This document shows, piece after piece, positions 7,460 through 49,316 of a stretch of DNA of 64,000 nt. Position numbers and translations under genes: made by a program. The notes under the pieces were generated by a model. It ran no database searches and was not told the DNA's origin. It was given only the letters and a program-made list of their open reading frames with translations. Location of the stretch: positions 434,001 through 498,000 of the forward strand of contig NIVC01001811.1 of the NCBI GenBank assembly GCA_002269645.1, read 5' to 3'. Each line of letters opens with the position of its first letter. Within the stretch, counting starts at the first letter, position 1. The stretch is from Macrostomum lignano. Taxonomy: Eukaryota.

Positions 7460-21211
<13,752 letters not shown>

Positions 21212-21239: not shown

Positions 21240-22535
<1,296 letters not shown>

Positions 22536-22896: not shown

Positions 22897-24175
22897 AGTC
22901 CAGTTATAAAAAAACTAGCGGAAATTCAATTCAGACAATTCAGACTGGGGCAACGCTTACGGAAAATCAATAGAAGCAAACCCCAGTTTAAAACACTATG
23001 CCACTGAAGCAAGGTTTAGCCATAGACAAAATCATCCCCAGTCTGAATTGTCTGAATTGAATTTCCGCTACACCATTTTACCCTCGAATTTGAACAAGGA
23101 GAACTTCGAAACCGACAAACTACTCTTCAATATTGACACTCTATGGTCGGGAACTCAAAATCTACAATCGATATTGACAGATCAAGCTTCAATTTTGACC
23201 AACTCTTAGGGCATAAATTTCGTATGCCGTGGTCCTCCTGATCCTCTTTATCCCCAACTGATTCGCCAGGTGCACAAAGTCGTCTCGGTTCTCATGAGCA
23301 GAAATCAGGCGCTGTCGGTCCTGGAAGGACACAGACCGATTTTTCGGCGGCCAGCTAGGCTGTTTCTGCTCCTCTTAAAAAACCTTCTGTGGCGATTAGC
23401 GATTAAAAGTCACAAACACGAGCAGAGCAAGAGCTGCTGTTTTCATGCTCTTTTGAATTCCTCCGTGACAAGATGTGCATTCGTTGGTCTGACCAACCAT
23501 CTATGATAAAAACTGAAGCAGTAGCCAATTAGATTCGAGGCGCAGGCTGCCTCAAGACATGGACAAAAAATAAACTGCCTTAGACAAATGACTGCCTCGA
23601 AATTTCCAAGCTTAACGATTCTTTGTCAAAATTGTCAAAATCTTAGTCAAAAAGTCTTAGTCAAAATTGATTGTAAACTGTTCAATATTGATTAGGAGTT
23701 GTCAAAAATGAAGCGGACTTTTTGGGTACACAAACCATAGAGTGTCAGTTTTGAAGCAACTCTGTCAAAATAGAATCGGACTTTGCGGCCCAACCAGTCA
23801 GGCTATTTTAGTCTGTGTATGTAAAAAGATGGAGAAAATTTTTTTATTAATACTTGTAGATCCCGAAAGAAAGGTCAGAATGAGCTGATTTTGCACAGAT
23901 AACTTCAGCCCCGTTCAGGTTTTCATTGGATTACTTTGTTACCGAATTCTCCAAAGACAAGTTGACTAAACGTGCATTGTCAAAATTTGATTAGTTGGTC
24001 AAAATTGAAGCTTGATCTGTCAATATTGATTGTAGATTTTGAGTGCCTGACCATAGAGTGTCAATATTGAGGAGGAGTTTGTCGGTTTCGAAGTTCTCCT
24101 TGTTCAAAATCGAGGTTAATACTCGTATTGACCAACTACACCAACTAAAATGGTGTAGTTTTTGAGAACTGGACT
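22897..24175. mobile_element. Three nested non-autonomous inverted-repeat elements
   Basis: Inner 1: 22918-23068 with 33-bp perfect TIRs (GCGGAAATTCAATTCAGACAATTCAGACTGGGG) between TA dinucleotides. Inner 2: 23081-24116 with about 120-bp TIRs (CCCTCGAATTTGAACAAGGAG...) between TA dinucleotides. Removing both restores an outer hairpin, AGTCCAGTT..AAAAACTACACCATTTTA / TAAAATGGTGTAGTTTTT..AACTGGACT. Confidence 0.8.
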
Positions 24176-24841
24176 GGACTAGGTGTACTAGAATTAATAT
24201 AGTAAAGCGAATTTATAAATTGTCTATGGTCGCACTTGATTTCGCAAGCTTGTACAGAAGAGTTGTCTATGGCCGCAACTGCAGTCATCAGCTAGTATAT
24301 CTAGTTTCTGAAAAAACGAAAGGACTCCCGTCCGCTAGAGTTTTGGATTAGCCTACGCTCGTATTTTTCATGTTTTAAAGTTGAAATAAATATTTGCTCC
24401 TGAACGCATACAATTATGTTCTTTGCACTTTCTATTTAGTTTGTTACTTATTCTGACATCGAATTAGTAAATTATGTTATAGCTAGTAATTACTTTTAAA
24501 TAGTTTTCACTTTTGTAAGAAGTTATTATTGAGATGCTAATGCAAAATATATGGAATCGACTTTCGTGTATAAGTTAGATGAAGATAAGTTTATTAGAAT
24601 TAAACATAAGCTTATTTGTAGCTATATATTTATTTAGTCAGCCGGCTACCCATAGAAAGCCCTAATATACCTGCTATATGCTACAGCAACAAAAATATTT
24701 TTTTACTAAATTGGAGCAAAATTTCAATTAGATTGCCCAGAAACTTCCTTTTTTAATGATAATTTTTAATGATGCTAGCCACCGGCATCGGATTAAAATT
24801 AAAATTAACTATACAATATACTTGGATAGAATTCTATCTAA

Positions 24842-25627
24842 CATAAACCTACGGTGATTACTGCTAGTAGATAGATCCATATCTACCATAGACCTTCGGT
24901 GATAGATGCTGGTAGATAGATCCATGTCTACCATATACTTCATAGACCTTCGGTGAGATGCTGCTAGATAGATCCATATCTACCATATACTTCATAGACC
25001 TTCGGTGATAGATGCTGGTAGATAGATCCATATCTACCATATACTTCATAGACCTTCGGTGATAGATGCTGGTAGATAGATCCATATCTACCGTAAACCT
25101 TCGATGATAGATGCTGGTAGATAGATCCATATCTACCGTAAACCTTCGGTGATAGATGCTGGTAGAAAGATCCATATCTACCGTAAACCTTCGGTGATAG
25201 ATGCTGGTAGATAGATCCATATTTACCGTAAACCTTCGATGATAGATGCTGGTAGATAGATTCATATTTACCGTAAACCTTCGATGATAGATGCTGGTAG
25301 ATAGATCCATATCTACCATATACTTCATAGACCTTCGGTGATAGATGCTGGTAGATAGATCCATATCTACCGTAAACCTTCGGTGATAGATGCTGGTAGA
25401 TAGATCCATATCTACCGTAAACCTTCGATGATAGATGCTGGTAGAAAGATCCATATCTACCGTAAACCTTCGGTGATAGATGCTGGTAGATAGATCCATA
25501 TTTACCGTAAACCTTCGATGATAGATGCTGGTAGATAGATCCATATTTACCGTAAACCTTCGATGATAGATGCTGGTAGATAGATCCATCTCTACCATAA
25601 AGCCATATGATAGATTCTGGTAGATAA
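24842..25627. repeat. 45/54-bp minisatellite (GATAGATCCATATCTACCGTAAACCTTCGGTGATAGATGCTGGTA)
   Basis: Tandem 45-bp units with 54-bp variants; explains ORF 24864-25667. Confidence 0.95.
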
Positions 25628-26163
25628 GGCTGTTGTTATCTAACGAAAACAACAAAAACAGATCCATTTTTAGTCAGTCGACGAAATGTCAGTCAATCAA
25701 CAAATAGTTAAAGAAAGATGAACAGTTTTACGCCATCTTTCTCCATTACAACTGTTGGTTGTTTACTCTCATTCGAAGTTGGTTGTTCAATTCTGCCATT
25801 CTCCAATTCGATCCCAATCTTCTTGGTAACGAAGCAGGATGTAGAAACCCCAAATGGTAGACTCGATGTACTTGCGATTTACAATTGTTGATCAGTCTCT
25901 CGGTGCATGCCATCGGAGATTATGTTGCTAAGCGAACGAAACTCTGTCCAAGAGTAAGAGCCTTAGTGTAGCGCTGCACCGACACAGGCTTCTTATGTCC
26001 AGTGACGACCTTCTTTTATTTTCTTAACTGTGACAAAATTATTCTTGATGAAAATTTGTCTATAGTCAGAATGTAGATTGCTGGCTTCCACACCCCCCAG
26101 CAGGGACTCCGTCCCCGCACCCCCGCTTGATGAGAATTTGTCTGGTCTATGGTAAAAAGCCCA

Positions 26164-26560: not shown

Positions 26561-26626
26561 GATGGCAATATTTCCGCACTGTTGCCGGGCGTCCTTCTGC
26601 TTGGCCTAAACTAGAGGACTGCCGGA

Positions 26627-26819
26627 GATAGATCCGTATCTACCATAAACCTACGGTGAAAGACGCTGATATATAGATTCATATCTACCATAGACCTTCG
26701 GTGATAGATGCTGGTAGATAGATCCGTATCTACCATAGACCTTCGATGATAGATGCTGGTAGATAGATCCGTATCTACCATAGACCTTCGGTGATAGATG
26801 CTGGTAGATAGATCCATAT
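26627..26819. repeat. Second array of the 45-bp minisatellite, same orientation as 24842-25627
   Basis: About 4 units of GATAGATCC[G/A]TATCTACCATAGACCTTCG... Confidence 0.93.
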
Positions 26820-27956
26820 TTTGAGTTAAAGCGCGGCCTGCATCTGCAAAGTTTAAAGTGTTGAGCCAGGACCGACGCCATTGTGATTGATGACTTAAGC
26901 GAAACAAAGGATTCGAAGCGCGCAATGAAGCTGGGAACAAGCCCCCAATCCAGATTTGTTTTATACAGCCAAAACTGTATAAAACCGTCAGCTGCAGTTA
27001 CTTATAATTGCAGAACTACTTCAGCACATAGACAGAGTTATGAAAATATACAAACGCAAACAGAAAAAATAGCATAGCCGATCAATTTCAGGGTCCGACG
27101 GCGATTTCATTGCGACACAAGGGCTTCAAGGGTTTCAAGTTGGAAATTCTTGCAGTCTCCCATTTCCCCGCATGCAATAATAAACTTTATTATTTATGGA
27201 ACTATATATGCTTTGGGTTTTGCACGAGACTGTTGATAACGAAATTTTATGTCGATTCTAATGCTTTTTTCTTCAAACACAAGGGAAAAGATTTTGACCA
27301 TGTGCAAGAAAGCCCCAGCATGATTAGCCCCCAAAAGTGGAACATTCCATTTTGGAAAATCTTTGCCAGTAAAAAGCTTCGCCTCATGGCGTGCACTAGC
27401 TATATGTTTCGGGTTGTGTGTGTCCGGGAAACTATTAAAGATGCAGCATGATTAGCCCCAAAAGTGGAATATTCCATTTTTCGCAAAAAATTACTCTGAA
27501 ATGTCCTCATACTGCTGTTGATGCTTCCGAATGCGCAAAACGCTGTGGGGCTGCGCATCCACGTCATAAAAGTCAACGTTGCAAATTTCTAAATAAGATG
27601 GGAAGACTGTGCATTACCAATTGTCTAATAATGCACTTACCAGGCATTAAATTTTTGAACCAGGCGCTAACTTATTCGTTTTATTTGGGCAGACTCATCT
27701 CGAAAACAGTAGCATAGTTTCTGCCGATCTTTGGCTATGCTGTTTAGTTAAATCCATTGGACAAAGAGACCCAACCTCTTGGCACAGAAACTTTTCTTGG
27801 CGGTACTGCATCAGATGGAGCAGGGTGCTGACAAGCCTGCATCTGATTGCACTGCATCTCCGCAGTCAGGAGTTTTGCCACCCAGCAAGCAAAAATGTGG
27901 GGGGGCTCAACAGCAAAAATGTTGTGTTCGGCAACAAATTAAGGAGTCACACAACC

Positions 27957-29514
27957 TTACTCAAAAAAGAATTCCACTACGTTGCTGGAACCGTTGGCTA
28001 CTATCCTCTTCTTCTTAGCCGGACCGGCAATTCGCAAATCGCAGGCGCCACTCGAAAATTGCTTGGCCGGTGCCTCAGTTGCGGTTGGATGTTTGTCGCT
28101 ACAGCCTCCCAGTGCTGGTGGCGCACGATCGGCGAGAGACTCGGTCAGCTGGCTGCTCAACTTGGCAAGAATGCTGTCTCTCTTTTTTCCCTGTCTGATG
28201 TACCGCTCCACTGAGGCGCTCGCCTGTTTCAAATATTTAAGAAGGATGCAAGAGAGAGTAGATAGAAAAAATCTCAAATATTTAAAGCATTTAATTATGC
28301 GGCTTATGATAGACAAGAAAATACAGAAAAAAGCACGTAGAAATTACCTTGTGTCCAGTCACCTTGGCGATAGTCTCTGTCGAATATCCAGCTTCGTGGA
28401 GCTCAGTGACTACAGTGGGTCGAACACAGTGCGCCGTATAGCTTCTCGACAGCCCGGCACTGGAAGATATCCGCTTAAGCATTGGTCCAAGCGTGTTGAT
28501 TCCGATTGCCTGTTTCGTATACCACAGGCCATTCGAGCCAACCAGCTGCTTCGGTCGCAGAAAAAAGTCCGAACCGTTCCATCCAGGCACTGCTTCGATC
28601 TTCCGCAAATACATGCGAAAGGCTTCAACGGGACACGATTTCTGATCGGACCCGGCCACCATGATCGCTTGCTTTGGGTCGTTGCTCTGCCTCAAATCCG
28701 TTGATCCATGGACAGTTTTACTGGTTCCAACTTGAAGCACAATGGCCACTCGTCCCTCAGCCAGACGCTTCTCAGAAAACGACTTTGCAGTCAGTCCTCT
28801 GAGCCAATCGCGGCCCCGGTTACCGAAATAATATAGAATACTGAAATACACTTTATCCTGAAGTTTGGTTGGACTGCTCCGATCGAAGTAGGTGTGCAGT
28901 TTAGACAGGTCGTCCGTTTCAATGGCCGAGAAATGATTGATTCTTCCTCCAAGACGCGGGAATTCGTTACAGGCATGTTTCAATGTCAGATTGACCGAAT
29001 GGAATTGCGGCAGAGAGATAATGTCCAAAGAGCGAAGCCTCATAAAGTGCCGATAAAGTCCGGCACGCATTCCCAACATTGTGTTGGGTGAATAGGATGA
29101 GCCGTCAGGCTTCTTTAGAGCGGCGTAAAAATAACGAAGAAATTTCGCAAGCTGCTCAGGAGTCACGGTCTCAAAGTCAAGGTGAATGTTGTTCTCCCGC
29201 AAAAAATCTTGAAACCGAAGACACGAAGCTTTCTCCTTGGCAACGCTTGACTCGCACTGATTTTCTCGTTCCAGCTTAGCGGCCAAGCTTTCAAGTTCAT
29301 CGATGTTGCACAAAGAATTCGGATCCACAGACATCTGCTCGTCCAAAAGTTTGCTTGTAACTCCTTCTTGCGAACAAGTGAGCTTGGTGATCTCGCGTTC
29401 GAATTTGCTGCTTACCGACTCGATAAACGTCTCCTCGGCGGACAATCCACAAACAGTCGCATACTGCATGTCGATTAGTGGAGCCGCCAAGTTTGAATTA
29501 ATTACACTCGCCAT
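27957..29514 (-). CDS. Crypton-type (DUF3504-like) tyrosine recombinase, two exons, about 477 aa, apparently intact
   Basis: Exon 1 29514-28348 (ATG GCG; 389 codons); GT-AG phase-0 intron 28347-28224 (124 bp); exon 2 28223-27957. Motifs: LAKFLRYFY...DGSSYSPNTM...RAGLYRH; catalytic R (FGNRGR), K (GTSKT), HCVR, TGHK and, across the splice, ASASVERY; also SCPVEAF, WYTKQAIGINTL, AGLSRSYT. An additional upstream exon cannot be excluded. Confidence 0.88.
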
Positions 29515-29952
29515 TTTTAAAAGCACGAACTTAAAAAGCAATTCTAAAGCTAAACTTTTTTCTTCCCAGTCTAATTTCTTGCGTGCAGGAATGACATTTT
29601 TTATTTATGAGCTGGTTACTTCGACATAGCCGCTGTCGAATAGATGGAATACTCTCCAAAAATAATCAGTGAAGGGGGAGAATGGCTCTAATAAGAATGA
29701 AATTCATGAACGCTTACTCGTGCGTCTGTGGCCAAAACACTCGTGCGCGAAGAATTATACATTGATGCACTCATAGCCATTGTCGGCTGATTTTCCATGC
29801 AGGAATGGCATTCTTGCACTGTTTTGCGTGCAGGAATGGATGTCTATGGTAAAATCTCACTGAAAAAGCATTAGGCGCAGAAATGCATTCCTGCACTGTT
29901 TTGTGCATTCCTGCACGATGAATAATCCGACAATGGGATTCCTTCACGTTCA

Positions 29953-30368
29953 CTCGTGCGTGAAGGACATCGTGAACTCGTGCGTGAAGGACATCGTGAA
30001 CTCGTGCGTGAAGGACATCGTGAACTCGTGCGTGAAGGACATCGTGAACTCGTGCGTGAAGGACATCGTGAACTCGTGCGTGAAGGACATCGTGAACTCG
30101 TGCGTGAAGGACATCGTGAACTCGTGCGTGAAGGACATCGTGAACTCGTGCGTGAAGGACATCGTGAACTCGTGCGTGAAGGACATCGTGAACTCGTGCG
30201 TGAAGGACATCGTGAACTCGTGCGTGAAGGACATCGTGAACTCGTGCGTGAAGGACATCGTGAACTCGTGCGTGAAGGACATCGTGAACTCGTGCGTGAA
30301 GGACATCGTGAACTCGTGCGTGAAGGACATCGTGAACTCGTGCGTGAAGGACATCGTGAACTCGTGCG
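29953..30368. repeat. Perfect 24-bp minisatellite (CTCGTGCGTGAAGGACATCGTGAA) x17
   Basis: 17 identical units from 29953 to 30360 plus a partial. Confidence 0.98.
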
Positions 30369-31139
30369 CTAGCGCGCACTCGTGCAGATGTCATTCCCGC
30401 ACTCGTGACCGTGCAGGAATCATTCATTCTCTACTACATCATTGCTAGTGGGACAAATTAACAAATAATGAACTAACACTTCATTATTTAGGCTTTAGGA
30501 ATCGTGCTACGATTATACCGGTACGAAACGCTCTAAATAGATCGTACACAACACGCACTAAATTAAAACGGCCCAATTGGGGGCCAATACACGCAAAAAT
30601 ACACAGAGAAAGTAGGAAATGATACGATTATTGTCATTTTAGTGCGTGTACACTAGGCCTTGGGCCTCCTTTGCAAACGATGACTTGTACAGCATGCAAG
30701 TAGTATACTGTATAGTAAATAATAATAATTTATTAACGATCTCTGTTCTTTTCTTGATCATCCAGATTCCAAACCATCGTAGCCGAGCGCATCTGGTCGA
30801 AGATGTGATGCAACAAAGCCTCGTGTTGGTAGAGATCTTTCAGATAAGTCAAACAATCCATGGGGAGACTTTACACCCTTAAAAGGGCATAGTCTTATGG
30901 CAAGGTGGGTGGCAAATCAGTAGCCAACATTAGGGAACAACGAAGTCACATCAAAGCTTGAAAGGACTGTGACCGCTTAAAGCCATTCAGGGCTTTAGGT
31001 TGAGTTGGACCTCAGAGTTAAACGGGACCGAGAATTCAAACCGAACCATCTGGGATACATGGTTTTATGCTACAGATAAATGACTTGCAACTTGATCAGC
31101 GGCCGTGAAGAAAGCTAATGAAAATTATTTGTTAAATTA

Positions 31140-31400
31140 TTCTGATGGAACACTGCATTACTGCCCATTAAGCAGACCCCTAAGCAGGCCCACATAGAAG
31201 TGTACAGCGGCCCTTACTTTATTTATCGTTCGGCATGTACACTTAGACTGTGCCTTGGGGGTTGGCCTTCAAGAGCGATAATTGCAGCCAAGCCGAGATT
31301 CCAATTGAGCCCCAAAACTAATGTGGCGGCTGCACTTGGAATCGAGCCTGGAGCGCCGGTAAATAAGAGCGCCGCGCTTAGACCACTGGGCTACGGCACC
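31140..31400 (-). mobile_element. tRNA-derived SINE
   Basis: Minus-strand head GGTGCCGTAGCCCAGTGGTCTAAG... with A-box TAGCCCAGTGG and B-box-like GGCTCGATTCC (31328-31400). Stems do not pair as a true tRNA; 3' boundary approximate. Confidence 0.6.
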
Positions 31401-32633
31401 CATTCCCCAACCTTAACAACAGGTTATTATAAATGTGGCCAGGACCACACACACTTACACAAATAGCGAGCTGGCTCGCTTCCCATGCATTTGAATATTT
31501 GCCCTGAGTTCACAAACATGTACCGTATGTTATTATTTTTACTATTTTTAACCGTTGACTACTTAAGTAGCATTATTACCTGAATTGCATGTAGCTGCAT
31601 TTTTCGCCAATTAGATAAATATTAATCCTTAAGGAGCGGTCTACTTCGACTAATGGCTTTTTCTAAGAAACTAATTACTTCCGTGAAGGGGATTATGCAG
31701 AGATGCGCGAGTGATCAATTAATTACCTGCAGGTCACAGTCGGCTTAGAAGATTATCTACGCGACAAGGAAATAATAGAAATTAGATAATTTGCTAATCC
31801 CCGCTCGCGTCAATGCGTGCTCAAGCATATTTCGAGCTGCAACAGCGTGCCACGGAAGATATTGCAGGGCAAAATTTTTTTTGTAATTTTCAAGACAAGG
31901 ACTGAGGCCTGCTTGACCATGGCCTCGTGTCAAAACAACACGTGCAAATGCTTCAAAAACAAGGCTGATAAAAAAACTGTAAACTATAATCAATTATACT
32001 GTACACCCGATCCAAGTTTCGCTTCGCGGTACATTAGGAGAATATGAACTTTTTAATGTTTTATTTTAGCACTCAAATTTTCGATTTTAATCTTCTAAAC
32101 TTCCATGGCTTTATTGCACGTAACTTTGGGTTGTTCGGTTAGATATTGAGCTCGCAAGTTTGTTAAGAAAACGTTTAAAAAACATTTTACATAGAATACA
32201 GTCGTACTTTTTAATCGGCAAATATCTGATTTTTGCATAGCACTGAATGGGGTTTTGCCAGAGACAAATTCAGCGCACCCGGAACAAAGCATCATTCTTG
32301 CTTCATAGGAAATTGGAAGTCCTTGAAATGGACTGGAACGTCTATGGCTAGACCACAGTATCGTTTGCATTGAGCGGATTCCCTCGGATCAGAATGCAAT
32401 CGAGCCAATATACGAGAGTAAACTTTATTGATGTATGCTCTATGTTATTTTCCTCGTTTCAGGGGATAAATTTAAATTGGGTTTCAGATGCACGATATTT
32501 TAACAGTGCCAAATCTAATAAAAATACCCCGTGATACCTTCTTAACTTAATTTTCCTAGTACAACTAGTTTTTGGCGAAGTAAAATTTATTTTAGTACGA
32601 TACTACTATATTACTATCGTTAAATTGTGTGTA

Positions 32634-33984
32634 CTTCGGCTGTCCGGAAAGTCGCGAGAATGTATTTTAAAAACCAGTCAGAACTATCAAAAAACACGAT
32701 AACAGCACTAGTTGGTAATGTAATCTCCCCTTGCATTGATTACAGCTTGGCAATGGTCAACGAGTCGCTGAACCTCTCTTTTTAAACAATCTTCGTCAAG
32801 GCCTCTTGCCCACTGCAACGCAGCTTCTCGAACTTCATTGTGGTCGCTGAATACTCGCCTGGAGAAATCATTCTTCATCCAACTGAACAAAAAACGGTCG
32901 CACAGATTGAAGTCTGGGCTGTAGGGACTCTGAAACACCAGCTGAACTCCACGGGACTCCATGTACTGCTGCACAGAACGGGCTACGTGAGGTCGCGCAT
33001 TGTCCCACTGCCAAAGAACATCCGACAGGTGAATTGGCTTTGACCTCAGAGTACGCCATAGGTCTCCCGTGTGCCGAATGAATTCAACTATGCCATCTGC
33101 ATCAACAGTTTGCTTCGGGGCTGTGGATTTAATGGAGAAGCGCTTGCTTGGAGTGAAAGCAACCAGAAGCATTGTCTTTGCATTCCCGACCGAGTGCCTG
33201 ACAACCTGGGGCCGATATCTCCTTGGCCAAGCCAGCACCTGTTGTTTTGCTTTGTGCCAGTGTTGTTCAGGTACACCCACGTCTCATCTTCCACCACGTA
33301 CTTGTCGCAAAAGTTTTCCACCCCCTCGTTGTAAAAAAGCCTGCGGATTTGCTTGGCACAATTGATGCGAGCAGTCTTGTTCTCCTCGGATAGAGCATGA
33401 GGAACCCAGACGGCAGAAACGTTTCGAAGGTGCAAATCCTCGGTCAAAATTTCGTGCACTGTTGTTTTACCAACTTCCAAAAAGTCAGCGAGGTCTCGGA
33501 CACCAACTTTTGAATCCTCTTCAACGAGAGCTCGGCAGGTTTCGATCAGTTCCGTTGTCCTTGTTGACCGTGGCCGGCCAGTCCGAGGAGCTGAGGCCAG
33601 GGGAAATGCTTTATCACGGAACTTTGAGTACCATCTATAAACCGTTGACTGACCTGGTGCGGCATCTCCATAAACTTTAAGTAGTTCGTCATAACAACTA
33701 ATAGCAGAGATTCCAAGACGGTATCTAGCGTAGGCATAAGCCTGGAAATCTTCCATTTTGACGAACTCGCTATTAAAATTTTCAAGCTTGATCACCGCGT
33801 TGCATTGGTTATTGAGCACTTTATGCTGAGCTCGCCCCTGCCCCCAATTTTGCTGCTAGAACAACAAAAACTTTCACTATAGACATATATAAGTCTATTA
33901 TTGAAATTTTATGTGTGCCATGTCATCAGCTTGCTGCTTTCTTGCTTGACTGACACATTCTCACGACTTTCCGGACAGGCGAAG
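32634..33984 (-). mobile_element. Full-length mariner element (1351 bp), D,D34D transposase with one frameshift
   Basis: 30-bp TIRs (28/30 identical) CTTCG[G/C]CTGTCCGGAAAGTCG[C/T]GAGAATGT; TA at 32632-32633 and 33985-33986. ORFs 33088-33819 and 32708-33280 join near 33215. Motifs WVPHAL, EDETW, WDNARPH, then 34 residues to D in SPDFNLCDRFLF. Confidence 0.96.
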
Positions 33985-35046: not shown

Positions 35047-36480
35047 TTAGCGATAGTTTCCCACTATCTCACCTTCCGGACTTCCGAATTCCAAATGAAG
35101 CAAGTTTGAGGTGCACTCACAAGCTAAACTAGCTATTCTTTTGTAAACTGCTATCGCAGACCTGCAAGCAAGCAAAATTCGAGCGAACTTTCTAGAATGT
35201 TTTTTTCGATCGACTTTGTCTGTGGCAAAACCGCATTTAGCGCTGTGCAAAAATCTGTGCAATTTCTGTAATTGGAAACCACAACTGTCTTTCAAGCGTT
35301 GTGTCCTGGTGGTAATGGTGACCAAGTCTGCCGCATTTGCTGCATCGATTCTTTCGATGGGGAGAGTTTCTTGTCCAATGATTTCTGAAAGTATCCAGAC
35401 TAATTGCTTAGAGTCTTGCTTTGACTTCTGTAAGACTGCTGACAAGGTTGCTTCGCAGACTTGACGTTCTGGATTGCGCCAGTTGACGAAATTGTCTAAC
35501 AATTTTAGGGTGACTCACTTGCTAGGGTGCGTGCGTCCGGCAGGGTCAAGTTGTCTTCCTGGAGCAGTCATGGATGGATCAGACGATTTATGAAGCCAAC
35601 AACAGATCGGTCTCTTGCTGCCTCATCTAAAAATCTGTCGAAGTGACACGTGATAGCCAGCTTCCGTAGACTTGTGAGGAATTCACCGACGGATTCCAGC
35701 TTCCGTAGACTTGTGAGGAATTCACCGACGGATTCCAGCTTCCGTAGACTTGTGAGGAATTCACCGACGGATTCCAGCTTCCGTAGACTTGTGAGGAATT
35801 CACCGACGGATTCCAGCTTCCGTAGACTTGTGAGGAATTCACCGACGGATTCCAGCTTCTGTAGTCCTGCTGTGGAAGTTAAAACAATTGTTAAAATGGT
35901 CCCTAATGGTCCCTAAGTTCCTTGATCAGATTACTTAGGGATCATCATCCTTCAGCAGACAGCAGACTCTTCATCGCTTCATCTGCCCCTTAGTTCACGA
36001 CGAGGTACTGCTTGAGTCTTTCTGAAACTTCCCAGCGTTCCGGCTTGGTGACGTTGAACTCTGCTACTTTGCTTGACGTTATTGTTATGTCTTCTGCTCT
36101 GACCTTCTGGAGCTTCTACATTCAAGTAAGGAAGACTGTGCTTTGTATCTTTAGCATTACAGGCTAAGTCTTTATTGCTCCGCTTGCGCGTGTCCTCTTA
36201 ATATCCATGTCGCAGATACTTTATTAGAAAATAATAAGTTGCACCATAGACAACAAAATTATCCGCTTCACGTCTTTTGAGTCTTTGCCAGAACAGCGCA
36301 GATCATTATCCAATGAAGACTCTTTAGGCTTCCTTGAAGCCAGCAGAATGCTGATAAGTTTAAATGTGTCCTTTCTGCAGACATCGAGGAACACCGCACA
36401 CTTGCTCAATGCGGTCAATGTTTTGCAGCGATTCCTCACTCTCTCTCAAAGCAGCCTTCTCAAAATACATTGAAACTACA
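35047..36480 (-). pseudogene. Possible degenerate multi-exon gene of unknown function
   Basis: Protein-like segments (ORF 35047-35502, a stop-interrupted frame at about 35950-36120, ORF 36224-36439) with some splice-like boundaries; could not be joined into a clean model. Confidence 0.3.
35656..35857. repeat. 39-bp minisatellite x5 (CCAGCTTCCGTAGACTTGTGAGGAATTCACCGACGGATT)
   Basis: Five near-identical tandem units. Confidence 0.96.
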
Positions 36481-41518: not shown

Positions 41519-42599
41519 CTATAATACAGTAAAGGTTGCTGTCAGCTTTGAGACTGTTGCAACGGTTAATCTCCTCTTAATACGGAGCGTTTAACGAGAC
41601 CAAAACAGTTTTATAACGCCGTTAGGAAGTCGCTTATTTACTACCAGTTCTCTTGCATACTAATTATAAATTTGACGATAGGCAGCAGTTTAGCAGGCTG
41701 AAGCGTACGCGCAGACAGGAAAGGCTCTGAACACAATATGTGAATAGGGAGTCGCTGTGTACGCTGCAGAAGTTTATGTGCTTATATTCCAGGCTATCAA
41801 TGTGCATGTGGACTGCCAGAGCCAATGGCAGTATGGCATGCAACAGACCCACTCATCATAAATGCCTAAAAAGCATAGGAACCAATTGCCCATTGCCCAT
41901 TGCCCATTGGCCCAAGCCCTGCTCCTCATTGTATTTGCTATTCTGGGTATTTTTGCTTCTAAAAGTCTAAAACTATGCAAACGCGCGCAGATGTGTCAAC
42001 TAAAACTTCCAATCAACACGCAATCCTAACTTGTAGGTGCTTTGAAGCTTGAACCAATCAATCCAGTTTGCTCAAATCAGTTTTAAAATAATTCTGAATC
42101 CCTGGTTGAAGCAAAGACCACTAGACCAGGAAGGACATTGCGAGGAACTGGTTAACATAAATTTATGCTTCCTCGTCTTGGGCTTCGGGCTTCGAGAAAT
42201 GTTACTCGTTCATCATTATCCCCGTGTCAGCAAATCCTGAGACATCCGGCATCTCCCTCTGGGTGTTGAGAAGTCCCGGGGACCGTATCAATTCCTCATT
42301 CAGCAGCTCGCAGCGCTTGCCGGGACTGCGACACGTTCGAGACGCGAGCAGCGATGGGAACGGACCGATACAGACAGCCGGGCCTGTCATGCCACTCGGG
42401 CTGCTGAAAGCTTGATGAATTTTTTAAGAACCCCCGCCAACTCAAGCAGCCCGGCCATGCATCATGGGGCAGACAGGGAGAGAGGGAGGAGAAGGGAAAG
42501 AGTCAACAACGAATTATGCGTGATCCGTTTCTCGATGCTGGATCTGCGTAGTCCTCTCCTACCATCTTCGTTGTGTATTTCTGACAAAAGTGCAGCGAA

Positions 42600-43250
<651 letters not shown>

Positions 43251-43477
43251 CTCAAGCAGTTCGGAGAATCCATATGAAACTGAAGAAGCATTGCGATTTA
43301 AAATTCTACTCAAACATTCGAAACCCTGGAGACTGGGATTACAAATCTGTCAAGCCAACAAAAGACAGCAGATCCTGGAGCCAATCCATATAGCCTCAAA
43401 GCAGGACTCAAACAGCTGCTCAGATTAACCTAATCCCACTGGCGCTCTGATAAGCAGCTCAGGTTTCCAAAGTTGGT

Positions 43478-45960
43478 ATGAAATTCCTGTCGCTGGGCTG
43501 GCTCTTCCTCCTGTCGTCCTTCCTAAATCCCATATCTGGGATTCCAGGAACAGCACTACCCCCCCCCCAGCCAAGGGAAGAGGCGGAGGAGCCGCTGCGA
43601 ATCCAAAAATATGCGCGAACATGTGACACAATTTTGCGTAAGCAGCAAACAGTTTGCAACATCAATATTTTGCCTGTACAGTGCGGCACTCCCTGACCCT
43701 GACCCCTGACTCTCCCTCTGACTCTCCCTCTGACTCTCCCCCTGACTCTCCCTCTGACTCTCCCTCTGACTCTCCCTTTGACTCTCCCTCTGACTCTCCC
43801 TCTGACTCTCCCTTTGACTCTCCCTCTGACTCTCCCTCTGACTCTCCCTCTGACTCTCCCTCTGACTCTCCCTCTGACTCTCCCTCTGACTCTCCCTCTG
43901 ACTCTCCCTTTGACTCTCCCTCTGACCCTCCCTCTGACTCTCCCTTTGACTCTCCCTCTGACTCTCCCTCTGACTCCCTCTGACTCTCCCTCTGACTCTC
44001 CCTCTGACTCTCCCTCTGACTCTCCCTCTGACTCTCCCTCTGACTCTCCCTTTGACTCTCCCTCTGACTCTCCCTCTGACTCCCTCTGACTCTCCCTCTG
44101 ACTCTCCCTCTGACTCTCCCTCTGTCTCTCCCTCTGACTCTCCCCCTGACTCTCCCTCTGACTCTCCCTCTGACTCTCCCTTTGACTCTCCCTCTGACTC
44201 TCCCTCTGACTCCCTCTGACTCTCCCTGTGACTCTCCCTCTGACTCTCCCTCTGACTCTCCCTCTGACTCCCTGTGACTCTCCCTCTGACTCCCTGTGAC
44301 TCTCCCTCTGGCTCTCCCTCTGATTCTCCCTCTGACTCTCCCTCTGACTCCCTCTGACTCTCCCTCTGACTCTCCCTCTGACTCTCCCTCTGACTCTCCC
44401 TCTGACTCCCTGTGACTCTCCTTCTGACTCTCCCTCTGGCTCTCCCTCTGACTCTCCCTCTGACTCCCTATAACTCACAGCCCAAATCATTGTCACTCAT
44501 TGCTTCTGGATCAGCTTATTGTATTTTTCAAATCTGCAACAACACGATGACCAAAGCCTCTTAATTTAATGTCTTAATCCATTTTCTGCCTTTACCTTCG
44601 TCTTCTTTGCGATGATTATTTTTTCAGTCAAGAGTAGCCCAAACCCGCAGCTTGAAAAAGCAAACTATGCAGTTATTTCAAAATTACGATATTACTGCGT
44701 GGCGCTGCAAATGCCAAACCGCCCCCTGATTAAATCCCAATTTTGCGCAGTTCAGCAAAAGGCGGAGCCATCGGATCAGAGGGAACAGAGGGAGAGGAAA
44801 TATTCGCGTAAGGATATTGATCAGAAAGAATGGGGATAATGTATGGCTGAATAAATTAGGCATGAATGTAGGGCTATATGCACTGCGATCATTTTTAGTC
44901 ATTGAATATTCGTTTTCAACGTGTATGCTTAATGCTCTCTGCACCCCTATTTCAGGCTTTAGCTCGATTAGAACCCTGCTTGGCCTGACAACTGGCTGAC
45001 CCTTGCTAAGCGCAACCGTTGTGTGTAACTGGTTAAACGATTGTGTCTAACAGGTGACAGATTGTGTCTAACATGTGAGAGATTGTGTCTAACATGTGAG
45101 AGATTGTCTAACAGGTGAGAGATTGTGTCTAACATGTGAGAGATTGTGTCTAACATGTGAGAGATTGTCTAACAGGTGAGAGATTGTGTCTAACATGTGA
45201 GAGATTGTCTAACAGGTGAGAGATTGTGTCTAACATGTGAGAGATTGTCTAACAGGTGAGAGATTGTGTCTAACATGTGAGAGATTGTCTAACAGGTGAG
45301 AGATTGTGTCTAACATGTGAGATATTGTGTCTAACATGTGAGAGATTGTGTCTAACATGTGAGAGATTGTCTAACAGGTGAGAGATTGTGTCTAACATGT
45401 GAGAGATTGTGTCTAGCAGGTGAGAGATTGTGTCTAACATGTGAGAGATTGTGTCTAGCAGGTGAGAGATTGTGTCTAACATGTGAGATATTGTGTCTAA
45501 CATGTGAGAGATTGTGTCTAACATGTGAGAGATTGTCTAACATGTGAGAGATTGTGTCTAACATGTGAGATATTGTGTCTAACAGGTGAGAGATTTGTTT
45601 AACATGTGAGAGATTGTGTCTATCAGGTGAGCAATAATATTTCTGCGATTGTCAGCTTTCATTAGCAGATTCATAACAAGATTTTGCTGGGGAAAGGATC
45701 CGGGAAGTAAACAGGATGCTAGCTTAATCAAGTGAGCCCTCAAATCCTGAAGTATGCAAGACAAAAAATATTAAAGAAAAGATTTTCGAGTAAAAAGGAA
45801 GAGTTTTCTTTTCCTTAACGAACTGGACTCGATACTTGCTTTTAATTTCCTGTCCTGCATCGAAGCAGCTGACTTCGTGGAGAAAGCATTGGCTTACGGA
45901 TCCAATCCATCTACCATTTCCAAGAAAACTGCATGGCACAATGAAACGAAAATAACGTAA
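43478..45960 (+). CDS. Tentative small secreted orphan protein (2-3 coding exons)
   Basis: 43478-43637: signal peptide MKFLSLGWLFLLSSFLNPISG, donor GTAAGC, phase 1. 44628-44807: acceptor TTTTCAG, 180 nt open, donor GTAAGG, phase 1-1. Possible terminal exon 45869-45960. No family recognised. Confidence 0.42.
43704..44467. repeat. 12-bp minisatellite (TGACTCTCCCTC)n
   Basis: Pyrimidine-rich tandem array with 10-bp variants. Confidence 0.97.
45038..45622. repeat. 21/19-bp minisatellite (GAGATTGTGTCTAACATGTGA)
   Basis: Alternating 21- and 19-bp units. Confidence 0.96.
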
Positions 45961-47035: not shown

Positions 47036-47626
47036 CAAAATAATTTTGCGGTCCTAGAATTCCAAATTTATTTTAAATACCTGATGTATGTCTTTACTTA
47101 TTTTGCACAAAAAATTCAATTCTATCCTTAACTTTCTACAACTCTTTGTTTAAGTGACCTTGCAGTGAACTCTCTACCATACACTTTTTCTAGGAATGCA
47201 CCTCCAAGATCATTCTGACAACTGTGCCAGATGACCCTGGCAGATAAAATTCAAGTGTGAAATACGGTTTTACAACTCCAGTGTGTGATAAATATGAATT
47301 TGTTTATCTACCCTCATCGCACAAAGACTCACCGCACAAAGCTTGATACAGATTCCCAGAGTCGGCATCAATTTCTGCAATTAAAGATGCATTTTTAAAG
47401 CAGGAAATGTGTCAAAATTATTTAAACAAAACTGCCAGACAAGGGAAGGGGTGCTGCCAGTGTGACCTCAAGATTGGCTTTTTAGGAGACGGGATCAATT
47501 TACCTGTGAGCCACGCCTACCTTACTGGCATGCCATTGTGTTCAATAGGTTCGTTTTCTCATTCACTAGCTCGGTTCCTTTGTAATTAAACCGTTTCCTT
47601 AAAGTCTTCTGCGCTTCTTGTCTCAC

Positions 47627-48070
47627 TCTCTCACTTCTTTCTCTCCCATCTCTCTCCCATCTCTCTCCCATCTCTCTCCCATCTCTCTCCCATCTCTCTC
47701 CCATCTCTCTCCCATCTCTCTCCCCATCACTCTCCCATCTCTCTCCCATCACTCTCCCCATCTCTCTCTCCCATCTCTCTCTCATCTCTCTCCCATCTCT
47801 CTCCCATCACTCTCCCCATCTCTCTCCCATCTCTCTCCCATCTCTCTCTCATCTCTCTCCCATCTCTCTCTCATCTCTCTCCCATCTCTCTCCCATCACT
47901 CTCCCCATTTCTCTCCGCATCTCTCTCCCATCTCTCTCTCTCATCTCTCTCCCATCTCTCTCCCATCTCTCTCCCATCTCTCTCCTCATCTCTCTCCCAC
48001 CTATCTCTCATCTCTCTCCAATCTCTCTCCCATCTCTCTCCCATCTCTCTCCATCTCTCTCCCATCTCTC
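47627..48070. repeat. CT-rich about 11-bp repeat (CCATCTCTCTC)n
   Basis: Polypyrimidine tandem tract. Confidence 0.95.

Positions 48071-48743: not shown

Positions 48744-49316
<573 letters not shown>

What the first reader, a model, noticed from the sequence alone, without database searches (positions are those of the whole stretch)
27957..29514. Apparently intact, intron-containing Crypton tyrosine recombinase with its catalytic Tyr on a separate exon
Seen: the ORF track ends the protein after TGHK, but a phase-0 GT-AG intron (28347-28224) joins it to ASASVERY, completing an R-K-H-R-H-Y set with no stops or frameshifts over about 477 aa. Established: Cryptons are rare tyrosine-recombinase DNA transposons that lack TIRs, and DUF3504 recombinase domains were domesticated in animal genes (ZMYM2/3/4, QRICH1, KCTD1/15), usually with degenerate catalytic sites. 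Inference: this is either a still-active animal Crypton (a possible genome-engineering recombinase) or a catalytically competent domesticated recombinase.
Basis: partly seen in the sequence, partly recalled or inferred. Interest (0 to 1): 0.82.

Follow-up and report, generated by a model that had tools for sequence, protein, structure and literature searches.

The report
Intact flatworm Crypton recombinase gene
The window holds an unbroken, one-intron gene for a Cre-like tyrosine recombinase of the Crypton family of DNA transposons, probably in a Macrostomum flatworm genome. It is a new member of a known kind, but its near-identical, clearly mobile 2-kb relatives in M. lignano could make Crypton transposition testable in the laboratory.

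Summary
On the minus strand, exon 1 (29514-28348), a 124-nt GT-AG phase-0 intron (28347-28224) and exon 2 (28223-27957) encode a 477-aa protein with a complete tyrosine-recombinase active site: R233, D236, K266, H362, R365, H388 and Y397. The Tyr lies alone on exon 2.

The protein passes Pfam thresholds for Phage_integrase and DUF3504. Its model superposes on DNA-bound Cre.

The closest relatives are two multi-copy Macrostomum lignano families (54-58% identity). One has an intron at the identical codon. These relatives are about 2-kb single-gene elements, 99.2-99.6% identical between copies, with different flanks. They have no TIRs or LTRs, a short (A/T)(A/T)TG repeat at the junctions, and subterminal arrays of CATTCCTGCACG.

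The window copy keeps a homologous 5' end (29759). It lies 18 bp from a 643-bp non-autonomous mini-Crypton (30420-29778). A 222-bp version of that mini-element has a filled site and empty sites in M. lignano.

No 3' terminal region follows the stop codon, so this copy is probably stranded, though it may still supply recombinase.

Verdict: a CryptonA/DUF3504-clade transposon gene and a new member of a known kind. Domestication is unlikely but not excluded.

The parts
28348..29514 (-). Exon 1 of the Crypton recombinase gene (codons 1-389). It carries the N-terminal core-binding domain and most of the catalytic domain: R233, D236, K266, H362, R365, H388.
   Evidence: Searches give the sequence and translation. 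Searches give the domains and conserved residues.
28224..28347 (-). Spliceosomal intron of 124 nt, GT...AG, phase 0, between K389 and A390. If retained, it gives a 407-aa product that lacks the Tyr nucleophile.
   Evidence: One search shows the same position and phase in the M. lignano P0001 gene. One search gives GC 0.28 and stops in all frames. One search gives the retention product.
27957..28223 (-). Exon 2 (codons 390-477 plus the stop at 27959-27957). It carries the catalytic Y397, a low-complexity linker with a KKKR stretch, and the conserved C-terminal RIVANGSSNVVEFFFE.
   Evidence: predicts a C-terminal beta-hairpin.
29515..29759 (-). 5' non-coding region of the gene-bearing copy. The inferred 5' terminus is AATG|TATAATTCTTCGCGCACGAGTG at 29759. 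It contains two GCACGAGT repeats (29716-29723, 29739-29746) and one CATTCCTGCACG motif (29582-29593, 68-79 nt before the ATG). Relative to the P0002-type it lacks about 50 nt, including half of the GC palindrome.
   Evidence: (29687-29748 is 86% identical to the L002 5' region).
29760..29777 (-). 18-bp spacer (GCTATGAGTGCATCAATG) between the mini-Crypton 3' end and the 5' end of the gene-bearing copy. It ends in the AATG core.
29778..30420 (-). Non-autonomous mini-Crypton of 643 bp. It has a 5' terminal part (30420-30369) with ATTCCTGCACG and the palindrome GAGTGCGCGCTAGCGCACGAGT. It has a 24-bp x 17.4 perfect tandem array (29952-30368). Its 3' terminal region (29951-29778) has two inverted and two direct copies of the 12-nt motif, ACCATAGAC, and the end ...GCCGACAATG.
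   Evidence: One search shows 95.4% identity to L003 9678-9896. One search shows the 3' architecture aligned with the P0001 and P0002 types. Searches show a 222-bp version inserted at ATTG^TC in L003/L004, a site that is empty in L001 and L005-L007.
13857..14182 (+). A second, decayed Crypton remnant of a different lineage: the C-terminal ~105 codons (...LDEAGLQRPDIFRVTGHSSSALERYVG...KKMRIEVSGNDSTVVITME*). It has no intron between GH and Y and is truncated upstream next to a mariner-like fragment. It lies within the span of the A2M/CD109-like host gene (the Pfam-positive ORFs at 8.9-18.5 kb), presumably in an intron; no gene model was built.
   Evidence: (tblastn E 7.5e-5, 31% identity to aa 354-477), and for the host gene domains.

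Best explanation
This is one copy of a compact, single-gene DNA transposon of the Crypton order (CryptonA/DUF3504 clade). The genome is most likely that of a Macrostomum flatworm.

The gene is transcribed and one intron is removed. The product is a 477-aa, two-domain, Cre-like tyrosine recombinase with a complete active site.

The proposed mechanism rests on the standard Crypton model and on the anatomy of the relatives. Recombinase molecules bind the 12-nt CATTCCTGCACG motifs arrayed inside both ends and bring the ends together. They exchange strands within the short (A/T)(A/T)TG core, which is present both at the 5' flank and as the last bases of the element. This releases a circle. The circle then integrates at another xxTG site by the reverse reaction, with no target-site duplication beyond the core.

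Shown here:
- the gene structure, the catalytic residues and the fold;
- the intron position shared with a transcribed relative;
- sharply bounded ~2-kb units at 99.2-99.6% identity in different flanks in M. lignano;
- the TG/AATG junction rule in 11 of 11 junctions;
- one filled site and four empty sites for the mini-element;
- conservation of the cis architecture in families whose proteins are only ~34% identical.

Inferred:
- that the motif is the binding site;
- the circular intermediate;
- present-day activity.

The window copy itself keeps a 5' end but has no recognisable 3' terminal region. It is most likely a stranded copy that cannot move. It could still supply recombinase in trans, for example to mini-Cryptons such as the one 18 bp upstream.
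For: - Gene and splice.
- Pfam: Phage_integrase 33.9 bits (cutoff 27.1) and DUF3504 34.0 bits (cutoff 29.7). 63 of 69 relatives hit DUF3504 and 61 of 69 hit Phage_integrase.
- Catalytic residues are conserved.
- The AF2 model has pLDDT 84.6. Foldseek matches DNA-bound Cre at E 9e-11, target-normalised TM 0.66-0.71 and rmsd ~5 A over ~350 columns. XerH, IntI4, Tn1549 Int, XerA and QRICH1 also match.
- A profile built from relatives matches QRICH1 at 2e-6 and XerA at 6e-6.
- The best homologues come from M. lignano only, at 54-58% identity over the full length.
- The P0001 cluster has 14 members with locus names up to g20. Five independent insertions share 2020-2074 bp at 99.4-99.6% identity, with unrelated flanks and neighbouring genes.
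- The P0002 family has three insertions of 1916-1981 bp at 99.2% identity.
- The 12-nt motif occurs 6 times in the window against 0.23 expected, always just upstream of the gene.
- The mini-element has filled and empty sites.
- The AATG core and near-identical motifs occur in the P0010 family. The P0005 and P0008 families have the same layout.
- No RT, TIR or LTR is present.
- pN is 0.29-0.33 while pS is saturated at 0.78-0.82 between families, indicating long-term purifying selection.
Against: - No 3' terminal motif cluster, ACCATAGAC box or similarity to any relative's 3' region was found in the ~1 kb compared with relatives' 3' regions or in the ~1.4 kb read by eye; in the whole window, the 8-mer motif core has no same-strand copy downstream of the stop codon.
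- The 5' region lacks half of the palindrome.
- Only one gene-bearing copy could be examined. The source genome could not be searched, so copy number, age and the true 3' end of this family are unknown.
- There is no RNA evidence for the window's own splice junction.
- Neither binding of the motif nor a circular form has been demonstrated for any Crypton (PMC10104507).
- The source organism is not established. An exon of the neighbouring A2M-like gene found no close protein in a database that includes the M. lignano proteome.
Confidence: 0.65

Rival explanations
1. Domesticated recombinase. The gene is a stationary host gene derived from a Crypton and kept by selection for a host function, either a catalytically competent recombinase or a DNA-binding regulator.
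For: - The ORF is intact although the copy lacks a recognisable 3' end and part of the 5' palindrome.
- The intron is maintained.
- There is a precedent for repeated DUF3504 domestication in animals (PMC3212892).
Against: - No fused host domain such as zf-MYM or BTB is present.
- The catalytic residues are all retained, whereas the known domesticates have mostly lost them (PMC3212892, PMC13465315).
- The gene lies among satellites, mariner fragments and a mini-Crypton.
- The 5' terminus is still homologous to the ends of mobile relatives.
- All close relatives are multi-copy mobile units.
Confidence: 0.1
2. A fully autonomous, mobile copy whose 3' end simply differs from those of the M. lignano families. 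One candidate end is GTCCAATG at 27762-27755, about 200 nt after the stop, with GATGCAG repeats in place of the CATTCCTGCACG motif.
For: - The distance from the stop to an AATG matches the P0002 type, which is 198 nt.
- Motifs are family-specific in more distant relatives.
Against: - The copy's own 5' region and the adjacent mini-element use CATTCCTGCACG, so a different 3' motif would be inconsistent within one element.
- AATG occurs often by chance.
- No ACCATAGAC box and no inverted motif pair were found downstream.
Confidence: 0.15
3. A dead relic. The ORF is open only because the copy is young. It is not expressed or not spliced, and it makes no functional recombinase.
For: - There is no expression data for this locus.
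- The cis ends are damaged.
- A perfect 24-bp x 17 array nearby shows that the region is in rapid flux.
Against: - 477 codons and both splice sites are intact, and every catalytic residue is kept.
- The homologous M. lignano genes are in a transcript-based annotation.
Confidence: 0.15
4. A fragment of a tyrosine-recombinase retrotransposon (DIRS, Ngaro or PAT), or a prokaryotic or viral integrase.
For: A Phage_integrase Pfam hit. One database protein (P0028) fuses a related YR to gag, endonuclease and RT domains, which is probably a chimeric gene model.
Against: - The relatives' whole mobile unit is ~2 kb and has room for the YR gene only.
- There is no RT/RNase H ORF nearby and no split or inverted long repeats.
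- The gene has a spliceosomal intron and a DUF3504/QRICH1-type N-domain.
Confidence: 0.01

Closest known systems
CryptonA elements of animals (Kojima & Jurka 2011, PMC3212892; for example CryptonA-1_OL of medaka and elements of Nematostella, sea urchin and Lottia)
   Same: - A single ORF encodes a tyrosine recombinase related to DUF3504.
- There is no C-terminal GCR1_C domain.
- There are no TIRs or LTRs.
- Non-autonomous derivatives keep both ends.
- The elements are multi-copy.
   Different: - The host phylum: flatworms are not in the 2011 host list, and no paper in the library links Crypton with Macrostomum.
- Kojima & Jurka found no terminal repeats in animal Cryptons. Here the relatives show a 2-4 bp (A/T)(A/T)TG junction repeat, or ACAAT(G) in the P0005 family, together with subterminal motif arrays and a 5' GC palindrome.
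- Placement relative to Repbase CryptonA sequences was not tested.
Unnamed multi-copy genes of Macrostomum lignano (BOX15_Mlig005367 g1-g20 = P0001 family; BOX15_Mlig018289 g1-g4 = P0002 family; annotated 'hypothetical protein' / 'ZMYM2-like/QRICH1 C-terminal domain-containing')
   Same: - Full-length collinear proteins at 54-58% identity.
- The same N- and C-terminal motifs.
- The same intron position in the P0001 family.
- Homologous 5' regions, the same 12-nt motif and the same AATG core.
   Different: - The window gene belongs to a third family, about equidistant from both, and was not found in the protein collection.
- The M. lignano copies have both ends and are 99.2-99.6% identical. The window copy lacks the 3' end.
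- The P0002 family has no intron.
Glomhoppers (DUF3504-encoding CryptonA elements of Glomeromycota fungi, PMC13465315)
   Same: A DUF3504 recombinase with retained catalytic residues. Intron-containing and intronless copies coexist. The elements lie in repeat-rich compartments.
   Different: The hosts are fungi. That paper reports no consistent intron positions across copies, whereas here one position is shared by two diverged families. The ends and target core are defined here.
Cre/loxP and other simple tyrosine recombinases (XerH, IntI4, Tn1549 Int)
   Same: A two-domain C-clamp fold (target-normalised TM ~0.7 to DNA-bound Cre) and an R-K-H-R-H/W-Y active site with the Tyr near the C-terminus.
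   Different: - About 16% sequence identity.
- An extra ~90-aa N-terminal region and a C-terminal tail.
- No 13-bp inverted arms around a 6-8 bp spacer at the element junction. Motifs are instead arrayed subterminally in both orientations.
- The only lox-like pair, CGTGCAGGAATG-AAGT-CATTCCTGCACG, is internal, in the 3' region of the P0001-type relatives.
- The shared core is only 2-4 bp.
Domesticated DUF3504 genes (QRICH1, ZMYM2/3/4, WOC, KCTD1, KIAA1958)
   Same: A homologous N-domain and the DUF3504 part of the catalytic domain. A profile of relatives matches QRICH1 chain 9hjt_H at 2e-6 over ~245 residues.
   Different: The domesticated genes are single-copy host genes with added domains, and most have lost the R-H-R-Y tetrad (PMC3212892). 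The window protein has none of the added domains and keeps every catalytic residue.

Membership tests
Tyrosine recombinase superfamily | Catalytic residues Arg I, (Glu/Asp), Lys, His, Arg II, His/Trp and the Tyr nucleophile, in order | tested here: met
   R233, D236, K266, H362, R365, H388 and Y397 are present. They are invariant or at least 90% conserved in 69 relatives. HxxR, GH and Y align with those of XerA.
Tyrosine recombinase superfamily | Two-domain fold: a helical core-binding domain plus a catalytic domain, forming a C-clamp | tested here: met
   The AF2 model has pLDDT 84.6 and pTM 0.71. Foldseek matches Cre-DNA complexes at E 9e-11, TM 0.66-0.71 and rmsd ~5 A over ~350 columns.
Tyrosine recombinase superfamily | Pfam Phage_integrase (PF00589) above the gathering score | tested here: met
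   33.9 bits against a cutoff of 27.1, aa 341-402.
Tyrosine recombinase superfamily | Recombinase activity (DNA cleavage and rejoining through a 3'-phosphotyrosine) | not testable with these tools
   This needs expression and assay, with Y397F as the control.
Crypton (order of YR DNA transposons) | The YR is the only enzyme encoded, with no reverse transcriptase, RNase H or gag | tested here: met
   The whole shared unit of the relatives is 1.8-2.1 kb and holds only the YR gene. No other coding ORF lies next to the window gene.
Crypton (order of YR DNA transposons) | No terminal inverted repeats and no long direct repeats | tested here: met
   The repeat finder on window 27000-30700 and on the L001 element finds only the short subterminal motifs and the tandem array.
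Crypton (order of YR DNA transposons) | Short direct repeats at the two termini (substrate of recombination) and no conventional target-site duplication | tested here: inconclusive
   Met for the relatives and the mini-element. All 11 of 11 5' flanks end in TG (AATG x6, ATTG x4, ACTG x1) and every 3' end is AATG. A filled site and empty sites show no duplication beyond TG. For the window's gene-bearing copy only the 5' side (AATG|TATAATTC) is visible. The 3' end was not found.
Crypton (order of YR DNA transposons) | Multiple dispersed copies with unrelated flanks (mobility) | tested here: inconclusive
   Met for the P0001, P0002, P0010 and P0005 families and for the mini-element, which is present in the window and in L003. 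The window's own gene family could not be counted because the source genome is not searchable. No second full copy is in the window, and none was found in metagenomes.
Crypton (order of YR DNA transposons) | Excision as a circle and reintegration | not testable with these tools
   This is hypothesised but not demonstrated for any Crypton (PMC10104507).
CryptonA group / DUF3504 clade | The YR is recognisably DUF3504-like (PF12012), with a QRICH1-type N-domain | tested here: met
   DUF3504 scores 34.0 bits against a cutoff of 29.7, and 63 of 69 relatives hit it. The QRICH1 domain is below cutoff in the window protein (16.3 against 30.8), but 31 of 69 relatives hit it. The profile of relatives matches the QRICH1 structure at 2e-6.
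CryptonA group / DUF3504 clade | No C-terminal GCR1_C DNA-binding domain (unlike CryptonF) and no C48 peptidase | tested here: met
   Only the three Pfam families above are found.
CryptonA group / DUF3504 clade | Phylogenetic placement among Repbase CryptonA recombinases | not tested
Domesticated DUF3504 host genes (ZMYM/WOC, QRICH1, KCTD1, KIAA1958) | Degenerate catalytic tetrad | tested here: not met
   All catalytic residues are retained.
Domesticated DUF3504 host genes (ZMYM/WOC, QRICH1, KCTD1, KIAA1958) | Fusion to host domains (zf-MYM, BTB, Q-rich region) | tested here: not met
   No such Pfam domains were found. The protein is collinear end to end with the transposon-encoded relatives.
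Domesticated DUF3504 host genes (ZMYM/WOC, QRICH1, KCTD1, KIAA1958) | Single copy in conserved synteny across species | not testable with these tools
   No eukaryotic genome collection is available. The source genome is unknown.
DIRS/Ngaro/PAT YR retrotransposons | RT/RNase H (and gag) adjacent to the YR, with split direct or inverted terminal repeats | tested here: not met

The most novel reading that the evidence does not exclude
The Macrostomum Cryptons are a currently active, minimal (2-kb, one-gene) metazoan tyrosine-recombinase transposon system. They have definable recombination sites: a TG/AATG core, CATTCCTGCACG arrays and a 5' GC palindrome. They also have natural mini-elements. On this reading, recombinase output is gated by splicing. 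The conserved intron separates the Tyr nucleophile from the rest of the active site. Intron retention therefore yields a Tyr-less protein (407 aa in the window; 408 aa in M. lignano), predicted here to remain competent to bind DNA, which would act as a built-in repressor, as with the third intron of the Drosophila P element. The window locus, with an intact gene, crippled ends and a mini-element alongside, would then be a stationary recombinase source driving non-autonomous elements.
Probability: 0.12. Interest if true: 0.7.

Novelty: new member of a known kind. Interest (0 to 1): 0.5.

Why it matters
Cryptons are the least understood order of eukaryotic DNA transposons. Their circular intermediate is still 'hypothesized, but not yet demonstrated' (PMC10104507), and animal Cryptons were reported to have no detectable terminal repeats (PMC3212892).

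The window gene by itself adds a flatworm family to a known group. Following it up exposed something more useful:
- 2-kb elements with base-exact ends and a TG/AATG junction rule;
- conserved subterminal motif arrays;
- a mini-element with filled and empty sites;
- copies 99.2-99.6% identical in M. lignano, a laboratory animal with working transgenesis (PMC5730564).

That combination would allow direct tests of Crypton excision, circle formation and site choice. It would also allow evaluation of a small, eukaryote-native, Cre-like recombinase with a defined DNA motif as a tool.

For genome annotation, these genes are currently labelled 'hypothetical' or 'ZMYM2-like' host genes in M. lignano. 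They should be treated as transposon genes.

Tried and rejected
1. Species identification. The 532-aa TED-domain exon of the neighbouring A2M/CD109-like gene found no protein at E <= 1e-20. The organism therefore stays 'Macrostomum-like', based on protein best hits and on 95% identical repeat fragments.
2. Reaching named distant relatives with a 9-sequence profile returned only the same 11 proteins.
3. A scan of JGI metagenome contigs for close relatives of the window protein found nothing. No second copy of this family was obtained, and its 3' end could not be defined.
4. The search for the 3' terminus covered exact 8-mers, a reading of 1.4 kb downstream and short-word BLAST against the 3' regions of the P0001 type, the P0002 type, the mini-element and the remnant. 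Only chance-level matches appeared, while the positive control (the P0001 3' region against the mini-element) gave many 12-14-nt matches.
5. The idea that the upstream block (30420-29778) is part of the gene-bearing element, or a circularly permuted or tandem junction, was rejected. The same unit is a discrete insertion in L003/L004 with identical 3' boundary and an empty site in four other copies. An 18-bp non-element spacer also separates it from the 5' end at 29759.
6. The first AF2 model, from 9 sequences, was poor (pLDDT 58.9) and gave TM 0.27-0.40. It was replaced by the 69-sequence model.
7. The guess that the repeat at 31155-31405 is a tRNA-derived SINE was not confirmed. ARAGORN finds no tRNA there.
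8. dN/dS between families is uninformative beyond 'constrained', because pS is saturated.
Full report
**1. The observation**

The gene lies on the minus strand. An ATG at 29514 opens a frame that runs to ...GTG ACT GGA CAC AAG at 28348. It is followed by GTAATT...AAACAG (28347-28224, 124 nt). The frame then resumes with GCG AGC GCC TCA GTG GAG CGG TAC and runs to TAA at 27959-27957. The spliced product is 477 aa with no stops or frameshifts.

An open frame after removal of a GT-AG segment is not evidence in itself. 49 alternative GT..AG pairs in this stretch also preserve the frame. The junction is supported by other facts:
- Only this junction aligns without a gap to homologues across KVTGHK|ASASVERYIR.
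- The closest intron-containing homologue has a 76-nt GT-AG intron at exactly the same codon and phase. This is the P0001 family of Macrostomum lignano, whose GenBank annotation derives from an RNA-seq-guided transcriptome (PMC5730564).
- GC drops from 0.49 and 0.55 in the exons to 0.28 in the intron, and the intron has stops in all frames.

The one thing missing is RNA evidence for this locus.

**2. The protein**

Pfam gives Phage_integrase (33.9 bits, cutoff 27.1, aa 341-402) and DUF3504 (34.0 bits, cutoff 29.7, aa 211-350). It also gives a sub-threshold QRICH1 N-domain.

In an alignment of 69 relatives, R233, K266 and Y359 are invariant. E/D236, H362, R365, H388 and Y397 are at least 90% conserved. 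The order R...D...K...HxxR...GH...Y is that of the tyrosine recombinases, and HxxR, GH and Y align with those of XerA. The intron falls between K389 and A390. The Tyr nucleophile is therefore alone on exon 2, as claimed.

A first AlphaFold model from 9 sequences was poor (pLDDT 58.9). A model from 69 sequences reached pLDDT 84.6 and pTM 0.71, with residues ~80-420 mostly above 90. Foldseek places it on DNA-bound Cre at E 9e-11, target-normalised TM 0.66-0.71 and rmsd about 5 A over ~350 columns. XerH, IntI4, Tn1549 integrase, XerA and human QRICH1 follow. A sequence profile of the relatives matches QRICH1 (2e-6) and XerA (6e-6) among solved structures.

The protein is a two-domain, Cre-like recombinase of the DUF3504 lineage. 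Kojima & Jurka showed that this lineage is the animal Crypton (CryptonA) recombinase lineage (PMC3212892).

**3. Relatives and what they show**

In the word-indexed protein search, the hits that carry an organism name are all from M. lignano: the P0001 cluster (58.5% identity in a global alignment) and the P0002 cluster (53.9%). The three are about equidistant. More distant relatives (25-39% identity in the 69-sequence alignment) come from ~2-kb metagenome contigs. An exhaustive HMMER search finds 4,552 clusters at 50% identity at E <= 1e-3 and 183 at E <= 1e-30, so the family is large.

The P0001 cluster has 14 members, with locus names up to Mlig005367g20, on many contigs. Five independent genomic copies (L001, L003, L005, L006, L007; L004 duplicates L003) share 2020-2074 bp at 99.4-99.6% identity. 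Their flanks and neighbouring genes are completely different. Three P0002 copies share 1916-1981 bp at ~99.2% identity. These are young, dispersed, sharply bounded units with room for one gene only. In other words, they are transposons.

Their ends follow a rule:
- Every 5' flank ends in TG (AATG x6, ATTG x4, ACTG x1 across 11 junctions).
- Every element ends ...AATG.
- There are no TIRs or LTRs.

Inside both ends lie three to six copies, direct and inverted, of a 12-nt motif. The motif is CATTCCTGCACG in the P0001 type and CAATCCTGCACG or CAATTCTGCACG in the P0002 type. An ACCATAGAC box is also present. The 5' region holds a GC palindrome, GCACGAGTGCGCG-N-CGCGCACGAGTGC, with a variable repeat number.

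The same layout recurs in families whose proteins are only ~34% identical:
- The P0010 family is a 1.82-kb unit at 99.8-99.9% identity in at least four flanks. Its ends are AATGGAG... and ...TACAAT|G. Its motif is ATTGCTGCACG, and it has the palindrome GAGTGCGCGTTAGCGCACG.
- The P0008 family has the motif CCCATTACGGCAC and the same palindrome.
- The P0005 family has an ACAAT(G) terminal repeat and the motif ACTGCAATG.

Conservation of cis elements across such protein divergence argues that they are functional sites. That the recombinase binds them is an inference.

**4. The window locus in that light**

The 12-nt motif occurs six times in the window, against 0.23 expected. All six lie between 29582 and 30421, just upstream of the gene. 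Two units can be separated.

(a) Window 30420-29778 (minus strand) is a 643-bp non-autonomous mini-Crypton. It has three parts:
- a 5' terminal part, AATG|ATTCCTGCACGGTCACGAGTGCG... with the palindrome;
- a perfect 24-bp x 17.4 tandem array (29952-30368);
- a 3' terminal region with the same order of elements as the P0001 and P0002 3' ends, finishing ...GCCGACAATG.

Its 29775-29991 segment is 95.4% identical to L003 9678-9896. In L003/L004 a 222-bp version of the same unit, with a single 24-bp unit, is inserted in the 5' region of a P0001-type element at GGAAAATCATTG^TCTTTTGACC. That site is uninterrupted in L001, L005, L006 and L007. This is a clean filled-versus-empty comparison, with no duplication beyond the TG. 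It is the signature expected of strand exchange within a short common core, not of a DDE transposase.

(b) Eighteen base pairs further on (spacer GCTATGAGTGCATCAATG), the gene-bearing copy begins. Its start is AATG|TATAATTCTTCGCGCACGAGTG... at 29759. This is homologous to the P0002-type 5' region (29687-29748 is 86% identical to L002). A CATTCCTGCACG motif lies 68-79 nt before the ATG, at the same distance as in the P0001 type. Compared with the P0002 type, about 50 nt are missing, including half of the palindrome.

Downstream of the stop codon, nothing resembles a Crypton 3' end:
- There is no motif cluster.
- There is no ACCATAGAC box in the right orientation.
- Short-word BLAST against four different Crypton 3' regions gives only chance matches, while the control comparison gives many.

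In the relatives the 3' end lies 198-261 nt after the stop. The most economical reading is that this copy has lost its 3' end. It would then be a stranded copy with an intact gene.

A further, decayed Crypton C-terminus of another lineage lies at 13857-14182 on the plus strand. It has no intron at the GH|Y position. It sits among the Pfam-positive ORFs of an A2M/CD109-like gene (presumably in an intron; no gene model was built), truncated next to a mariner-like fragment. Cryptons are therefore long-term residents of this genome.

**5. Source organism**

The source is not given and was not established. Three things point to Macrostomum (M. lignano or a congener):
- The organism-named protein hits are all from M. 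lignano.
- A 219-nt mini-element segment and an 84-nt MITE segment are 95% identical to M. lignano DNA.
- Several other repeats are shared at 70-86% identity.

Against M. lignano itself, neither the window protein nor the neighbouring TED-domain exon finds a near-identical protein in a collection that includes its proteome.

**6. Mechanism**

Shown:
- the gene structure, active-site residues and fold;
- mobility and youth of the relatives;
- the junction rule, and the filled and empty sites;
- the conserved cis architecture.

Established elsewhere: the Crypton model of excision as a circle by recombination between short terminal direct repeats, followed by reintegration (Goodwin et al. 2003, as summarised in PMC3212892). 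The circle has not been demonstrated (PMC10104507).

Inferred here:
- The recombinase binds the 12-nt arrays.
- It synapses the two ends and exchanges strands within (A/T)(A/T)TG.
- The window gene, if spliced, makes an active enzyme that could act in trans on mini-elements.

If the intron is retained, translation stops after 407 aa, before the Tyr (408 aa in the P0001 type). Such a product would lack the nucleophile. By the domain layout it should keep the DNA-binding parts, although this was not tested. This suggests, but does not show, a P-element-like splicing control.

**7. Comparison, novelty and scores**

Intact CryptonA recombinases, non-autonomous Crypton derivatives and intron-containing Cryptons are all on record (PMC3212892; PMC13465315). 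The finding is therefore a new member of a known kind.

What appears to be new, within the library searched, is the following:
- the host group (flatworms);
- exact ends and a junction rule for an animal Crypton clade, where the 2011 survey found no terminal repeats in animal Cryptons;
- conserved motif arrays;
- the very recent activity of 2-kb elements in a transgenesis-capable model animal.

That makes an old open question, how Cryptons actually move, directly testable. I score interest 0.5.

Domestication of this particular copy remains possible (about 0.1). It needs synteny data to settle.

Noticed in passing
window 29952-30368: A perfect (100% match) 24-bp x 17.4 tandem array (unit TCACGATGTCCTTCACGCACGAGT on the minus strand) lies inside the mini-Crypton. 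The M. lignano version of the element has a single unit, so the expansion is very recent. The unit contains the GCACGAGT repeat of Crypton 5' regions. It produces spurious 130-220-aa ORFs in several frames.
   Followed up: partly
window, 15 sites (e.g. 14358, 23020, 24886, 26145, 26688-26778, 29842); loci L001-L009: The 8-mer CCATAGAC (usually ACCATAGAC) occurs 15 times against 1.39 expected. It is found in Crypton 5' and 3' subterminal regions, in the 45-bp satellite (24835-25601, 26626-26819), in a TIR-bearing MITE (22926-23060) and beside a G-rich hairpin mini-repeat (26075-26160). It is also common in M. lignano loci outside Cryptons. It may be a shared host-factor or promoter site. This is unexplained.
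   Followed up: partly
window 13857-14182 (+), with possible 3' region to ~14440: A decayed C-terminal remnant of a different Crypton lineage (GH...ERY contiguous, no intron). It is followed by its own repeated motif (CGTCCCGGACAA / GACCGGGACAAG), ACCATAGAC and ...GCAAATG / AGCAATG. It is truncated upstream next to a mariner-like fragment (13317-13601, minus strand).
   Followed up: partly
window ~8900-18530 (+): A multi-exon alpha-2-macroglobulin/CD109-like thioester-protein gene (Pfam MG2, A2M_BRD, TED; a possible LDLa exon at 15160-15651). Transposon debris lies between its ORFs, presumably in introns. The 532-aa TED exon found no close protein in the large protein collection.
   Followed up: partly
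window 797-1632 (+) and 32708-33819 (-): Two frameshifted mariner/Tc1-like transposase pseudogenes (HTH_48, HTH_Tnp_Tc3_2, Transposase_1 and DDE_3 hits). A third fragment of the same kind lies at 13317-13601.
   Followed up: no
window 31155-31405: A ~250-bp repeat shared at 71-77% identity with L001, L002, L003 and L004 of M. lignano, in varying positions relative to the Cryptons. It looked tRNA-like by eye, but ARAGORN finds no tRNA. It is probably a separate SINE or MITE.
   Followed up: partly
window 7644-8213, 19206-19685, 20510-20785, 21242-22535, 35657-35864, 42462-44496, 47618-49317, 60855-62078: A very high density of micro- and minisatellite arrays: (GACA)n of 1.3 kb, (TAG)n, a 39-bp x 5 array, and long arrays that give repetitive pseudo-ORFs. 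This is consistent with the unusually repeat-rich genomes reported for M. lignano.
   Followed up: no
L003 9497-9671 (and L004): The 5' region of this P0001-type copy is rearranged. After the normal 43-nt terminus comes ~80 nt of unrelated sequence and then an inverted copy of the terminus, before the mini-Crypton insertion. This suggests recombinase-mediated inversion or rearrangement between motif copies.
   Followed up: no
L010-L015, L016-L021, L022-L023 (metagenome contigs): Three distant Crypton families are assembled as stand-alone ~1.8-2.3-kb contigs from marine and other metagenomes (including TARA samples). Copies are 98.2-99.9% identical, in differing flanks where contigs extend beyond the shared unit (P0010 and P0005 families), so these are recently active compact Cryptons in unidentified small eukaryotes. 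JGI labels one of them 'site-specific recombinase XerD'.
   Followed up: partly
P0004 (JGI contig, 1773 bp): This 50%-identical relative has a 64-aa in-frame insert that begins VS... and ends ...LLQ between FFLKPRRTYK and NGQWYTKQ. It looks like a translated, stop-free intron at a different position from the window's intron.
   Followed up: no
P0028 (2114 aa, representative library): A protein model fuses a 57%-identical Crypton recombinase N-terminal part with gag, an endonuclease/exonuclease/phosphatase domain and reverse-transcriptase domains. It is most likely a chimeric gene prediction across a Crypton and a LINE-like element.
   Followed up: no
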